Below are positions 41,618 through 45,967 of a stretch of DNA of 64,000 nucleotides, one piece after another. The notes beneath the pieces were generated by a model. It saw only the letters and a program-made list of their open reading frames with translations, ran no database searches and was not told the DNA's origin. The stretch lies in assembly GCA_977030845.1 (NCBI GenBank), contig OZ365114.1, positions 23,188,001-23,252,000 of the forward strand. Reading direction: 5' to 3'. The number at the start of each line of letters is the position of its first letter. Position 1 is the first letter of the stretch. This DNA comes from Fimbriosthenelais zetlandica. Taxonomy: Eukaryota. The translations under genes and the position numbers were made by a program.

Positions 41618-44600
41618 CTATAGATGATTGTTATCTATTTCTATTTTAACAAGAGATGCTGTTTTGAGGACCCCAGCAAGTATTTCCTCTCCTGTTGGTT
41701 TGATTTCCGTTGGTGGTAACTGGAATGAAGATTTGAAATATAAATAATCAATCATTAAATTCCTCTCAGATTGACAGTAAATAGAAACAAAGAGATGTAA
41801 AACTGCTTATTGTGTACCTGGAATGATATTGCCATGTGGGGTTTGACTTTATTTGGTCTCAGTTCCAGGGTGTATGCATATTTGACGCCAGCGGTGGCCT
41901 TGGCCCAATCCATGGATGACCCGGAAGCAAGGTCTGAGGAGAAATGGAAACATTCAATCAAAGCAAATCAGCTGATTGTTCTTATCATTCCTTTTAAACG
42001 GAACTTTGAGCAATACATGAACTTCCATAGTACCTTGGAGGTAAAAATTCACTTACAGTGTCTTTCTGGGAAATTCAGTACTTCATAGGTTTCTCCATGA
42101 ACATTGTAAATAGCAGCAGCTGATAAGTTGGCCACACGTTCCTGGAAATATAGGATAATACTGGATTGTGTTACAATATACGTCAGGTGTATAAATAGTC
42201 ATGGGTGAAGAAAAGAGACTACAAACTCATAGACTGTCAGTTGATTGTTTGGATCAAAATAGATCGGTTGATTGGGAGGAAGGATTAGGGACTCAATGTC
42301 CCAGTATAGGCTGTGGCAATGCTTGCTGTAGACTTCAGGAGGACTTGGCAGGAACACGCCTGCATGTGTCCTGTCATAATGATGCTGAGAACTGTCTTTA
42401 ATCGAAACTTTATGGACTATGGAACTGCCAAGCAGCCAAATGGATTCTCCTACAAGAGAACATAAGGCGTCTGTGGATTATGATGGACCTACCAAGTCAG
42501 GATAGTCAGGTGCACGGTAGTGCTCCCCAACCCATGGTAGCACAAAGTACTGGAGATATGCGTGCAGAGAGAAGTAAATGTGCATGTCTTCCTTCTCTGC
42601 AAACAGGAAGTCTCGAATGTTGCGAGACTCGGGTTCAGAGAAAGGTGCCCTGCCATGGAAGTTCAGTGAGCAAGGATTATCACCAGAGAATCCTGGAATG
42701 GAACAGAGGACGAAACTGTATGATGATTATCACAATCCGTCCCTGATGAAAGAAAGACGATACCTACCAGTTCTGGGAAATCAGGAGCTCTTCTCTTCAC
42801 ACCCACCCACGGCAGGACCCAGAGCTGCATGAAGCAGTGAAGAGAAAAGTAAATGACCATTTTCTGCTTGTTGGCCAGGATGAAGTCTCGGATGTTGCGA
42901 GACTCATGTTCAGAGAAGGCTTGGGTTCCTTGGTAGGTGAAGGAGCAGGGGTTACGCTGGGAGTATCCTGGTTAGGGATTATACAGATATAGGTATGCAG
43001 GGTATTAAGTATGCCAGGGTCCAAGAAGGGTTATCAGTCTGATATTATTGAAAGTCAAGGATAAAGCATGGTTTGTAAGACAGGGATGTTATCTGAGGTT
43101 GCTATTAAAATCCATGTAAGGAGAAATGAGGTATAGAAGATGTTGTAGAACCTGTAATATCGAGCTTTGGAATGAGATAAATGGAGATCAATTGTTAAAA
43201 AATAAGGTGTAGCAAAGCAAAACACATACTTCCCCAGTTGAAGTCGAAGTTCCTATTCAGATCAACACCGAAGCCTCTCTTACATCTGTCAGGGCAAGGA
43301 TCATTTGGACTTCGGTTCTTTCTCCACAGTCGATTCTGAAATCAATCAATTTATATATTATAAATTCACTGACTCAGAGGAGTTCTCCATGCCAAAATGA
43401 ACCAAATGTAATGTGCTTTCTGACCTCTGTCCATGTCCAGTAGTAGCCATCTGGGTTGACCATTGGTAAAATGAACCATTGATAGGCGTCAGCAATGGAG
43501 CGGATGCTCTCTGATTCATTGAACACAATCTGGTAACAATAGAGAAAACTATTATTGATTACTTCAATTTACCTTTCCATCAATATCGTTGCAAGATATT
43601 ATAAAATGTCATAGCAACCTGATGTATGATATGAAGGGCTGTTGCTGGGGCTATCCACTCTCTTGCATGGATTCCGGCATCGATCCAAATCTTGGGTTTC
43701 CCGTTTCCCTCATTTAGCTGCAAGATAGGACGGATCTTATGAAGTTAAACCGTATGTATCGGCTACATAAATTCCTGGTAAAGTTAATGTTAGAAAGAGA
43801 TAGTTGTGGAGGTACATGTGTTCAGTCTACCTTTATACCGTACATGCTCCTGTTCTGATATGACTTGCCGATATTGATGAGTTTGGCTCGTCCCTCAGAT
43901 GCATTGACAACTCGCTTTAGGTAGTCATTGATCTAAACATTAATATGAATTGATGGTTTTATAAATTGTTGAATGATTCTGGATAAAATGAGTATAAGTA
44001 ACAGTGTAGTTATGTTCATAGACGCTACCTCTCCATACAGCATGTAGTAGTGAGGGGCTTCCACCTGGTGGCGATTCAGGGACCTACGCTTCCTCTTTGA
44101 TTTCTGAGCTTCCACCAGGTTTTCATGCATCTCTTCATCCAAGATTCTGAGGGGTGAATTAAGGGAAGGAGTCAATGGTTTCTAGCTATGGCATGGAATA
44201 CCAACTTGGTATATTATATTAATTGAGTAATTCTTTCTGTGAGTTAGCATAGCTCACCTCTGTAAGTTGTTCGTTGTCTGGGTATATGAGAGACCCGTGG
44301 TTGCTAGGTAACTGATCACATGATCCTGTTCATAAGGCGAGACAGCAACCTCAACCGGAAGGTCTCGATTGATGACGTCACACAAAATATATACCTTTAA
44401 AGGAATTGTTAATGCAATTCTAATAATATATAGCTGATAATTAAGCATTGGGGATTGCATAGGTAAAGAATTGGGTATATTTATGTTGATTTTCCATTGG
44501 GAGAGAATTATCATAAATGGCTCCACAAAAGAAGCTCTTGTTTGGGGCACAAACTTTAGACAGTGTACTTACATAGTCACTGTCATCATAGTCCTCTAGA

Positions 44601-45873
44601 AAGCTCTGGATAGCTTCAGTTTGCTCTTGATTCTTTGCTGGCCCTATGGTGAATACTGACCAACTGAAGAAGAGATTGAATGAGGAATATGTTTAGTGGT
44701 ATAACTTGAAAGGAATAAGGTCAAAGAGGAAATTAAAATAAATAGTTCTTGCTCCCTTTCGTTTGACATAAACAGGGGTAGACATTTAATGATACATTTT
44801 GTTTGTGATTTGGTCAGGTCCTTGACTGCTCCTGTTTATATTGGCGTTATAAACAAGCACATGGGGGTGCTACAATCTGGGTCGCTTATCTCGTTTTGTA
44901 TTGAGGGCCATGTGTTACGATCTTAGCTTACTATAACAAATGCCATAGACGTAAATGAAAGATCCAAATCACAGCTTAGCCATAGTCTGCGATGGGGGTC
45001 TGTTGGATTCTTCTGAATATCAATTATAACTTAGGAATTGATCGATAATTCATGCCTTGTTTCTGCATGACCCAGGCAGAAATAATGCCTCAAAAGTAGG
45101 CCTAACTCTTTATGTAACTTAAATGATGTCTCATGATAATCTACCCCACATAAAACTTGTCCTAAATGTAATTCTGAGAAGGACATGTCATTCTTGGAAG
45201 ACAAACTCCAGAAAGTAAACTTTTTGTCGTTTCTTATAACTTTGTCAGTGATCTAAATCAGGGTCTAAACTGCCAAATGATGATGTGACACCGCGGGGCA
45301 TATTTCCGCTTCCGTCTGATTAGCCTCGTTTGGAGACTTGTGGGCAGGCTGCCAATTGGTCAGTGCCGAGTGTAACCTCAGACAAGGACGACGTCTGGCC
45401 GTAGAGATTAGTATTCATATCAGCGAGGCACCCAGAAATAAATGAGTGCAACATTGCCCCGCAACAAGGCCTATAGACCAATGTTGCCCCCAATATCTGG
45501 GTCCTGCTTCAGTAAAAAAAAATCCACTACACGAGCCCAGGGACTCATGTAGCAAATTCTTGTCGTCGTTACCTTATTAGAAATATTGGGATCCAAGTAT
45601 TACTAGTTTTTTGATGAAACAATATATTAACATTACTTGTATTCCCAAATCTTAGAGTCTCTGACTTTTATTTGTAACCATAAGGATTATCATATTGGTT
45701 CACAGATCTATAGAGCTATTAGTATACGATTAGAAATTACGAACATATTAAGTTCCAAAAAGTTATTCAAAAAGTTCTACTCACTGTCTGAAGCGTTGCA
45801 CTTTAGCTAATAGTAGGGTGGGAACCAATGCCAAAAGGCATATAGTGGTGAAAGTTGATAGTTGATGGAACAT
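41618..45873 (-). CDS. M14A zinc metallocarboxypeptidase (CPA/CPB family), 449 aa preproenzyme. Exons: 45785-45873, 44573-44663, 44258-44394, 44029-44146, 43831-43932, 43619-43717, 43425-43529, 43230-43335, [42768-42967 or 42493-42692], 42057-42141, 41818-41933, 41618-41719
   Basis: All introns are GT-AG with consistent phases (1350 nt with one cassette). Signal peptide [23 protein letters not shown], then a prodomain and KRKRR. Family motifs: DAGIHAREW (H69/E72), NPDGY, RLWRKNR (R127), GVDLNRNF (N144/R145), SLH (H196), Y248, GSSMDW, YTLELR (E270). Confidence 0.96.
42493..42692 (-). CDS. Carboxypeptidase cassette exon 9b (200 nt)
   Basis: cattccag|ga ... ttg|gtaggt. Encodes [66 protein letters not shown]. 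Confidence 0.93.
42768..42967 (-). CDS. Carboxypeptidase cassette exon 9a (200 nt)
   Basis: ctaaccag|ga ... ctg|gtaggt. Encodes [66 protein letters not shown]. Confidence 0.93.
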
Positions 45874-45961: not shown

Positions 45962-45967
45962 TTTATA
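45962..45967 (-). promoter_or_regulatory. TATA box of the carboxypeptidase gene
   Basis: TATAAA on the - strand, ~90 nt upstream of the ATG, which has a cacaaaATG context. Confidence 0.55.

What the first reader, a model, noticed from the sequence alone, without database searches (positions are those of the whole stretch)
42493..42967. Duplicated, mutually exclusive active-site exons in an M14A carboxypeptidase
Seen: two tandem exons of exactly 200 nt, each with phase-1 entry, phase-0 exit, a good acceptor, the same GTAGGT donor and no stops. They share 39 of 66 residues (59%). Each carries C161 and zinc ligand H196 (bovine CPA numbering, known). Because 200 is not a multiple of 3, including both or neither shifts the frame, so exactly one must be used. 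Inference: one gene makes two enzymes with alternative active-site cores. I do not know of this arrangement in a CPA/CPB-type gene, but could not search.
Basis: partly seen in the sequence, partly recalled or inferred. Interest (0 to 1): 0.9.

Follow-up and report, generated by a model that had tools for sequence, protein, structure and literature searches.

The report
Alternative exon pair in a carboxypeptidase
A secreted zinc carboxypeptidase gene of a probable annelid carries two side-by-side, diverged copies of the exon holding one zinc-binding residue; both copies are kept intact by selection in a second species, so the gene very probably makes two enzyme versions, though no RNA could be checked.

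Summary
A 13-exon M14A procarboxypeptidase gene lies on the minus strand (45873-41618). It holds two tandem 200-nt exons, A (42967-42768) and B (42692-42493). Both have AG acceptors, GTAGGT donors and the same phases, with 39/66 residues and 129/200 bases identical. Each fills Pfam Peptidase_M14 positions about 142-203 once. Using both or neither gives an early stop.

An orthologous contig from a related species (L001) keeps both exons at 200 nt with the same splice sites. The intron between them has changed beyond alignment there (52 vs 75 nt). Both exons are under purifying selection (pN/pS 0.16 and 0.04). A is as constrained as the neighbouring constitutive exons.

The duplication is lineage-specific: five other lophotrochozoan M14A loci have one copy. 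The cassettes share the zinc ligand, the disulfide cysteine and the pocket residues 203 and 207. They differ at peptide-contact positions 163, 164 and 197-199 and by about 8 charge units.

No RNA run was listed and no transcript or close protein was found, so mutually exclusive use is inferred, not shown. I found no precedent in M14A. The mechanism is a well-known kind, and this scan has noted many such pairs in the same genome, including this same stretch (s1-231888).

The parts
45785..45873 (-). Exon 1: ATG (45873-45871) and a signal-peptide-like N-terminus, [23 protein letters not shown]. The donor is ACA|gtgagt. A TATAAA lies at 45967-45962.
   Evidence: The CDS reads through from this ATG to the stop with either cassette, giving 449 aa.
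44573..44663 (-). Exon 2, start of the pro-segment
44258..44394 (-). Exon 3, activation peptide. It gives a weak Propep_M14 match (E 0.0014, 19.1 bits for the exon alone).
44029..44146 (-). Exon 4, end of the pro-segment, with the polybasic KSKRKRRS (44103-44080). This is a likely activation cleavage site.
   Evidence: Cleavage there is inference.
43831..43932 (-). Exon 5, Peptidase_M14 profile positions 1-34
43619..43717 (-). Exon 6, with the zinc motif HAREW (H69, E72)
   Evidence: profile 43-72, E 2.4e-10
43425..43529 (-). Exon 7, constitutive. The orthologue in L001 is at 298-402, with 28/35 aa identical.
43230..43335 (-). Exon 8, constitutive, with LWRKNR (R127) and GVDLNRNF (N144, R145). 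It ends one base into an Arg codon that either cassette completes.
42968..43229 (-). Intron between exon 8 and cassette A, 262 nt
   Evidence: It shares no conserved element with L001.
42768..42967 (-). Cassette A, 200 nt: [13 protein letters not shown]...[15 protein letters not shown]...PEL. It is basic (net +2.9). Position 198 is Phe.
42693..42767 (-). Intron between A and B, 75 nt. It is the shortest intron in the gene, and is 52 nt in the relative.
42493..42692 (-). Cassette B, 200 nt: [13 protein letters not shown]...[15 protein letters not shown]...PDL. It is acidic (net -4.9). Position 198 is Tyr.
42142..42492 (-). Intron between cassette B and exon 10, 351 nt
42057..42141 (-). Exon 10, constitutive. 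It ends with the T of the split TAC codon for Y248.
41818..41933 (-). Exon 11: (Y)LASGSSMDW (Y248, M255) and YTLELR (E270)
41618..41719 (-). Exon 12, C-terminus, with the TAG stop at 41620-41618
42883..42905 (-). Predicted hairpin inside cassette A: GAGUCUCG, a 7-nt loop, then CGAGACUU, over the codons for ESRNIRDF
   Evidence: Its function is unknown.
42608..42630 (-). The same predicted hairpin inside cassette B
   Evidence: Its function is unknown.

Best explanation
This is a lineage-specific tandem duplication of one coding exon of a secreted M14A (CPA/CPB-type) procarboxypeptidase gene. The duplication has become a pair of mutually exclusive exons. Each mRNA takes cassette A or cassette B, and either one completes the catalytic domain over bovine CPA residues about 155-219. 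That segment includes C161, the zinc ligand H196 and the strand that lines the active-site cleft. Exclusivity is enforced at least by the reading frame. At 200 nt each (3n+2), double inclusion or double skipping runs into an early stop, giving either a nonsense-mediated-decay target or a truncated protein that lacks Y248 and E270. The very short A-B intron (75 nt here, 52 nt in the relative) may add steric hindrance to splicing A onto B. The two products are 449-aa zymogens that share all catalytic residues and the S1' residues. They differ at 27 of 66 cassette positions, among them peptide and inhibitor contact positions 163, 164 and 197-199, and they differ by about 8 charge units (mature pI about 9.1 vs 6.9). 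Shown here: the anatomy, the frame logic, conservation and purifying selection on both cassettes, and the lineage-specific origin. Inferred: that both are spliced in, that use is exclusive, the role of steric hindrance, and any functional difference.
For: Pfam profile positions run collinearly across the exons, and positions 142-203 are supplied once by either cassette. The orthologous contigs L001 and L002, from a relative, carry both cassettes at 200 nt with AG acceptors and GTAGGT donors. The intervening intron there is 52 nt and largely unalignable, and the other introns do not align at all. Nei-Gojobori counts, window vs L001, are 17 synonymous and 10 non-synonymous changes for A (pN/pS 0.16, binomial p 4e-6 against neutrality) and 14 and 2 for B (pN/pS 0.04, p 5e-8). 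The flanking constitutive exons e7+e8 give pN/pS 0.11. The split Arg codon at the e8/cassette junction stays Arg with both cassettes in both species: AGA/AGA here, CGA/CGG in L001. A vs B synonymous divergence is near saturation (pS 0.64-0.68), so recent gene conversion does not explain the intactness. In the tree, A pairs with its orthologue (98/85), B with its orthologue (100/94), and all four form one clade (100/98). Synonymous divergence in the cassettes is about half that of e7+e8 (Fisher p 6e-5), as is often seen for regulated alternative exons. Both known ways of enforcing exclusivity are documented. In C. elegans, non-3n MXEs rely on NMD. In human, 60% of clusters are non-3n and 9% have a donor-to-branch-point distance under 50 nt (PMC4165533, PMC5740500).
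Against: There is no RNA evidence at all. No run was listed, and no transcript-derived or close full-length protein exists in the searched collections. Selection rests on one species pair and few substitutions. Cassette A has the weaker polypyrimidine tract (0.60 vs 0.85), so it could be a minor form. No conserved intronic docking or selector sequences were found. A 75-nt intron is not clearly too short to splice.
Confidence: 0.72

Rival explanations
1. Only one cassette (most likely B, which has the stronger acceptor and tighter constraint) is ever spliced in. The other is a leftover of the duplication and is not translated.
For: No transcript evidence exists for either cassette. A has the weaker polypyrimidine tract in both species. 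A carries unusual residues next to the zinc ligand, H-C/S-F instead of the usual H-S-Y.
Against: A keeps its 200-nt length, open frame, AG acceptor and GTAGGT donor across a divergence with pS 0.40, while the introns became unalignable. Its substitutions are biased against amino-acid change (10 non-synonymous vs 17 synonymous, p 4e-6), to the same degree as the constitutive exons e7+e8 (Fisher p 0.62). A and B are too diverged for gene conversion to be refreshing A.
Confidence: 0.1
2. Both cassettes are spliced, but the pair serves mainly to tune expression. Double inclusion or skipping yields frame-shifted, degraded mRNA (regulated unproductive splicing), and only one protein form matters.
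For: Both-in and both-out products carry early stops. MXE-joining reads are common for non-3n clusters in human and worm (PMC5740500, PMC4165533).
Against: Dosage tuning does not need a second coding-quality copy. Protein-level purifying selection on both cassettes and preservation of the Arg split codon for both junctions point to translation of both.
Confidence: 0.1
3. The duplication is an assembly artefact or a collapsed haplotype or paralogue.
For: Database proteins from other animals do show exact in-frame repeats of this region that look like assembly artefacts (P0004, P0006, P0029).
Against: The two copies differ at 71 of 200 bases. The same diverged pair, in the same order, is present in two independently assembled contigs of another species.
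Confidence: 0.01

Closest known systems
Mutually exclusive exon pairs that arose by tandem exon duplication and are kept exclusive by frame incompatibility and NMD (for example the 19 non-3n clusters in C. elegans, PMC4165533, and 60% of human MXE clusters, PMC5740500)
   Same: The exons are adjacent and homologous, with equal length and identical phases. Their length is not divisible by three, the intervening intron is short, and the region they encode sits inside a folded domain, so exactly one copy is needed.
   Different: The host gene is an M14A carboxypeptidase, which I did not find in the human atlas (main text and 11 supplementary files) or in the C. elegans list. Use in RNA is not shown here.
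Steric-hindrance MXEs (alpha-tropomyosin exons 2/3 type; donor-to-branch-point distance under about 50 nt, PMC5740500; introns under 40 nt in C. elegans, PMC4165533)
   Same: The A-B intron is the shortest in the gene (75 nt, and 52 nt in the relative). Candidate branch points lie roughly 38-50 nt from the donor.
   Different: The minimum spliceable intron length in this genome is unknown, and 75 nt may well be spliceable. This part is inference only.
Docking/selector competing RNA structures (Dscam exon 6, srp; the model of Ivanov and Pervouchine, PMC6071210)
   Same: Duplication has copied a stem-loop, so each cassette carries identical arms that could in principle pair across cassettes.
   Different: The arms are exonic, not intronic. 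No conserved intronic complement was found. The local hairpins are what the minimum-energy fold predicts. There is no covariation to test.
Drosophila silver (svr, carboxypeptidase D, M14B), with alternative 1A/1B forms of its first carboxypeptidase domain (recalled from memory, Sidyelyeva and Fricker; not retrieved here)
   Same: It is an M14 family gene that makes alternative versions of a catalytic domain from one locus.
   Different: It belongs to a different subfamily (M14B, multi-domain, membrane-bound). As I recall, it uses alternative 5' exons or promoters rather than an internal tandem pair swapping the H196 segment. This comparison is not tested here.
Insect digestive carboxypeptidase resistant to plant inhibitors (PDB 2c1c, a match), and peptide-interface hotspots of A/B carboxypeptidases (PMC13388685)
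   Same: Residues 161, 163, 164 and 196-199 are listed as persistent contacts with protein inhibitors. The cassettes differ at 163, 164 and 197-199.
   Different: There, different genes carry the variation. Here a single gene could switch it. Any effect on inhibitors or substrates is untested.

Membership tests
M14A (CPA/CPB-type) metallocarboxypeptidase | Peptidase_M14 catalytic domain | tested here: met
   Exon translations hit PF00246 collinearly at profile positions 1-34, 43-72, 77-108, 110-138, 142-203 (A or B) and 239-270. PDB sequence matches are to CPA1, CPA2, CPA4, CPB, CPB2 and CPO.
M14A (CPA/CPB-type) metallocarboxypeptidase | Zinc ligands H69, E72 (HxxE) and H196 | tested here: met
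   HAREW lies in exon 6. SLH lies in both cassettes, aligned to the His of SLHSY/SIHSY in homologues and in a PDB carboxypeptidase B.
M14A (CPA/CPB-type) metallocarboxypeptidase | Catalytic and substrate-anchoring residues R127, N144, R145, Y248, E270 | tested here: met
   The motifs are LWRKNR, VDLNRNF, the split codon T|AC for Tyr before LASGSS, and YTLELR. Assignment is by motif alignment, and the numbering is from established knowledge of bovine CPA.
M14A (CPA/CPB-type) metallocarboxypeptidase | N-terminal activation segment (Propep_M14) and secretion signal | tested here: inconclusive
   Exon 3 alone gives PF02244 at E 0.0014 and 19.1 bits, below the 22.1 cut-off. Full-length homologues that align from about residue 14 of the e2-onward model carry PF02244. 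The hydrophobic N-terminus was read by eye and not run through a predictor.
Mutually exclusive exon pair from tandem exon duplication | Adjacent homologous exons of the same length and phases, each with usable splice sites | tested here: met
Mutually exclusive exon pair from tandem exon duplication | Both copies maintained by selection in related species | tested here: met
   This rests on one relative (L001/L002): pN/pS is 0.16 for A and 0.04 for B, with length and splice sites kept.
Mutually exclusive exon pair from tandem exon duplication | Joint inclusion or joint skipping is non-productive | tested here: met
   Early stops arise in both cases.
Mutually exclusive exon pair from tandem exon duplication | Transcripts contain one and only one of the exons, and both single-inclusion forms exist | not testable with these tools
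   No sequencing run was listed in either allowed search. No transcript-derived protein was found.
Docking/selector RNA-structure MXE | A conserved intronic docking site complementary to selector sequences next to each exon | tested here: not met
   Orthologous introns of the two species share no k-mer of 11 nt or longer. Only exonic hairpins are conserved.

The most novel reading that the evidence does not exclude
The identical 8-bp hairpin inside each cassette has stems invariant at synonymous sites in both paralogues and both species, while loop third positions vary. It could be a duplicated exonic RNA element that takes part in choosing or excluding a cassette. That would be a competing-structure mechanism carried in the exons themselves rather than in introns, and it would control a switch between a basic and a near-neutral carboxypeptidase with different extended-substrate or inhibitor contacts.
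Probability: 0.1. Interest if true: 0.7.

Novelty: new member of a known kind. Interest (0 to 1): 0.45.

Why it matters
If both forms are made, one gene supplies two secreted zinc carboxypeptidases. They would share catalytic machinery and primary (S1') pocket residues, but differ in the cleft wall that contacts upstream substrate residues and protein inhibitors, and differ strongly in charge. Protease families usually reach this kind of diversification by gene duplication. It would give enzymologists a natural cassette swap for asking what residues 155-219 contribute to specificity and inhibitor sensitivity. It also adds to the picture that this annelid lineage uses tandem exon duplication widely. 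The splicing mechanism itself is well known.

Tried and rejected
- **Exhaustive search with cassette B** against 1.8 billion representatives. It gave only one close hit, P0001, an ORF that reads through the A-B intron of a relative.
- **Word-indexed searches** with the A ORF and the B ORF. They found only P0001.
- **Profile search** using a full-length homologue plus window exons. Its best 120 hits are at most 45% identical to either isoform, so no orthologous transcript or annotated isoform was found.
- **Metagenome scan.** It returned only distant M14 sequences, at most 45% identical over the exon.
- **A third, decayed copy in the flanking introns.** The best hit (HFSLHGF in the e8-A intron) is reached by 31 of 200 shuffles, so I rejected it.
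- **Multi-match database proteins as evidence of the same duplication elsewhere.** They are fused tandem genes or exact repeats.
- **NCBI X1/X2 isoform pairs of arthropod homologues.** They differ by small indels or termini, not cassette swaps.
- **Literature.** I found no M14A case. Only 15 of the 24 papers were listed.
Full report
**Observation**

On the minus strand the stretch holds two tandem exons of exactly 200 nt. Cassette A is at 42967-42768 and cassette B at 42692-42493. Each follows an AG acceptor and precedes the same GTAGGT donor. Each is stop-free only in the frame that begins at its third base. They share 39 of 66 residues and 129 of 200 bases. Each alone hits Pfam Peptidase_M14 at E 3.9e-09, over profile positions 142-196 and 143-203.

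**Gene model**

I rebuilt the whole gene on the minus strand.

| Exon | Coordinates | Content |
|---|---|---|
| 1 | 45873-45785 | ATG and a hydrophobic signal-like N-terminus |
| 2 | 44663-44573 | pro-segment |
| 3 | 44394-44258 | pro-segment |
| 4 | 44146-44029 | pro-segment, ending in KSKRKRRS |
| 5 | 43932-43831 | catalytic domain |
| 6 | 43717-43619 | HAREW (zinc ligands H69, E72) |
| 7 | 43529-43425 | catalytic domain |
| 8 | 43335-43230 | LWRKNR and GVDLNRNF (R127, N144, R145) |
| A | 42967-42768 | cassette A |
| B | 42692-42493 | cassette B |
| 10 | 42141-42057 | catalytic domain |
| 11 | 41933-41818 | Y248 from a split T\|AC codon, M255, E270 in YTLELR |
| 12 | 41719-41618 | C-terminus and TAG |

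- All introns are GT-AG.
- With either cassette the CDS is 1350 nt and encodes 449 aa.
- With both cassettes the frame runs into ...[12 protein letters not shown]. With neither it runs into ...WGRTCGQ...RNL*.
- The exon translations cover the Pfam profile collinearly. Positions 142-203 are supplied exactly once by either cassette.
- This is the only M14 gene in the window.

**Relatives**

An exhaustive HMMER search with cassette B found one close sequence, P0001. It is a 118-aa ORF that reads from the second half of an A-type exon, through a short intron, into a B-type exon. Its contigs are L001 and L002, from Logan assemblies of two runs. They are 99.2% identical to each other, and they still contain introns, so they are presumably genomic. 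They are the orthologous locus of a related species. Only exons 7, 8, A and B align to the window; the introns do not.

There, both cassettes are again exactly 200 nt, with AG acceptors and GTAGGT donors. The A-B intron is 52 nt instead of 75 and aligns only at its ends. The last base of exon 8 differs (A here, C there). The split codon nevertheless stays Arg with both cassettes in both species: AGA/AGA here and CGA/CGG there.

**Selection** (Nei-Gojobori counts, window vs L001)

| Segment | Synonymous changes | Non-synonymous changes | pS | pN | pN/pS | Binomial p vs neutrality | aa identical |
|---|---|---|---|---|---|---|---|
| Cassette A | 17 | 10 | 0.40 | 0.064 | 0.16 | 4e-6 | 57/66 |
| Cassette B | 14 | 2 | 0.32 | 0.013 | 0.04 | 5e-8 | 64/66 |
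| Exons 7+8 | 31 | 14 | 0.74 | 0.083 | 0.11 | 1.4e-12 | 59/70 |

- A is therefore as constrained as the constitutive exons next to it (Fisher p 0.62), and B is more so.
- A vs B synonymous divergence is near saturation (pS 0.64-0.68). Recent gene conversion from a working copy therefore cannot explain why the other copy is intact.
- Synonymous divergence in the cassettes is about half that of exons 7+8 (Fisher p 6e-5). This is a pattern often seen in regulated alternative exons. With so few sites I treat it as suggestive only.

**Origin**

- In a maximum-likelihood tree of the cassette region with 45 homologues, A groups with its orthologue (98/85) and B with its orthologue (100/94). The four form one clade (100/98), and B sits on the longer stem.
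- The duplication therefore happened in this lineage, before the two species split.
- The closest full-length homologues are only 40-45% identical. They include proteins of the annelids Owenia fusiformis and Capitella teleta.
- Five lophotrochozoan M14A loci (two Owenia, two Capitella, one Lingula) each carry a single copy of this exon.
- Earlier notes of this scan call the genome probably annelid and list many candidate exon pairs of this kind in it. My homologue ranking is consistent with that.

**What differs between the two products**

Two anchors give bovine CPA numbering near each end of the cassette: C7 = C161 and H43 = H196, with P52 = P205. The PDB matches place cassette residues 3-63 on CPA1 residues 156-215.

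- **Same in both:** C161, H196, Q200, V203, L204, P205, W206, V207. The zinc ligand and the S1' pocket positions inside the cassette therefore do not change.
- **Residue 255**, outside the cassette, is Met. That suggests a CPA-like hydrophobic preference for both forms. This is inference from established knowledge of CPA/CPB specificity.
- **Differing positions**:

| CPA position | Cassette A | Cassette B |
|---|---|---|
| 163 | F | L |
| 164 | T | N |
| 197 | C here, S in the relative | A |
| 198 | F | Y |
| 199 | M | L |
| 201-202 | LW | YF |

- There are also many surface differences.
- A molecular-dynamics survey of A/B carboxypeptidase complexes with protein inhibitors lists C161, E/D163, T164, H196, S197, Y198 and S/G199 among persistent contact residues (PMC13388685). 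The swap therefore plausibly changes recognition of upstream substrate residues or of inhibitors. This is untested.
- Charge changes strongly. The cassettes carry +2.9 and -4.9. The predicted mature enzymes have pI 9.1 and 6.9.

**How exclusivity could be enforced**

- **Frame.** The frame rule is shown by the sequence. It matches what is documented for other non-3n pairs. In C. elegans, NMD removes joined or skipped forms for 14 of 19 such clusters (PMC4165533). In human, 60% of clusters are non-3n (PMC5740500).
- **Steric hindrance.** The A-B intron is the shortest in the gene, and the two flanking introns (262 and 351 nt) are the longest internal ones. At 52-75 nt, the distance from donor to a likely branch point would be near or below the roughly 50 nt limit cited for human. 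The limit for this animal is unknown.
- **Docking and selector elements.** I found none conserved in the introns. Orthologous introns share no k-mer of 11 nt or more.
- **Splice-site strength.** The acceptor of B is richer in pyrimidines than that of A in both species (0.85 vs 0.60). Both values lie within the range of the constitutive exons. B may be the default form; this is inference.

**An unexplained detail**

The codons for ESRNIRDF form an 8-bp hairpin, GAGUCUCG, a 7-nt loop, then CGAGACUU, at about -9 to -10 kcal/mol. It is present in both cassettes and both species. The synonymous positions of the stems are invariant in all four sequences, while the third-position base in the loop varies. 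Only 6% of synonymous encodings of that peptide fold this well. The local hairpins persist in the minimum-energy fold of the whole A-intron-B stretch in both species. The stems never vary, so there is no covariation to test. The four sequences are also not independent. I report it as a lead, in the spirit of the duplication model for competing structures (PMC6071210), not as a finding.

**Comparison with what is known**

The arrangement is a textbook mutually exclusive exon pair born by tandem exon duplication.

- I found no M14A example in full-text searches.
- I found none in the human MXE atlas, including its 11 supplementary files.
- I found none in the C. elegans survey.
- Annotated isoform pairs of arthropod homologues differ by small indels or termini, not by a cassette swap.
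- The nearest family precedent I can recall is Drosophila silver (carboxypeptidase D, M14B), with alternative forms of its first domain. That is from memory and was not checked here.

**Verdict**

The reading that one gene makes two enzymes is well supported by selection but unshown at the RNA level. 'Alternative active-site cores' should be softened to alternative cleft-wall and surface segments around an unchanged zinc ligand. It is a new member of a known kind. The scan has already noted this same stretch (s1-231888) and many similar pairs elsewhere in this genome.

Noticed in passing
window 42883-42905 and 42608-42630 (minus strand); L001 1449-1471 and 1701-1723: The same predicted 8-bp hairpin (GAGUCUCG, 7-nt loop, CGAGACUU) lies inside both cassettes in both species. 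Its stem synonymous sites are invariant and its loop third positions vary. Only 6% of synonymous encodings of ESRNIRDF fold as well.
   Followed up: partly
window 42493-42967 compared with 43230-43529; L001 298-1838: Synonymous divergence between the two species is about half as high in the two cassettes (pS 0.32-0.40) as in the adjacent constitutive exons 7+8 (pS 0.74). Fisher p is 6e-5.
   Followed up: partly
L001 1387-1838: In the relative, A + the 52-nt intron + B is 452 nt. That has the same remainder mod 3 as 200, and it is stop-free, so retaining the intron would stay in frame (this is how ORF P0001 arose). In the window the 75-nt intron breaks the frame and gives a stop, so the property is not conserved and is probably chance.
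   Followed up: yes
window 44080-44103 (minus strand): A polybasic stretch, KSKRKRRS, lies at the end of the pro-segment. It looks like a convertase- or trypsin-type activation site rather than the single Arg of pancreatic procarboxypeptidases.
   Followed up: no
window 42493-42692; L001 1639-1838: The RNA of exon B folds more stably than mononucleotide shuffles in both species (z -3.3 and -2.6). Exon A does not clearly do so (z -0.8 and -1.7).
   Followed up: no
window 43108-43158 (minus strand, intron between exon 8 and cassette A): A short HFSLHGF-like stretch resembles the zinc-ligand motif of the cassettes and could have been a relic third copy. Hits this good occur in 31 of 200 shuffles, and nothing similar is seen in the relative.
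   Followed up: yes
window 45962-45967 (minus strand): A TATAAA lies about 90 nt upstream of the proposed start codon.
   Followed up: no
proteins P0004, P0006, P0029 (other animals): These database carboxypeptidase models contain exact in-frame repeats of this same region. They are probably assembly or annotation artefacts rather than alternative exons.
   Followed up: partly
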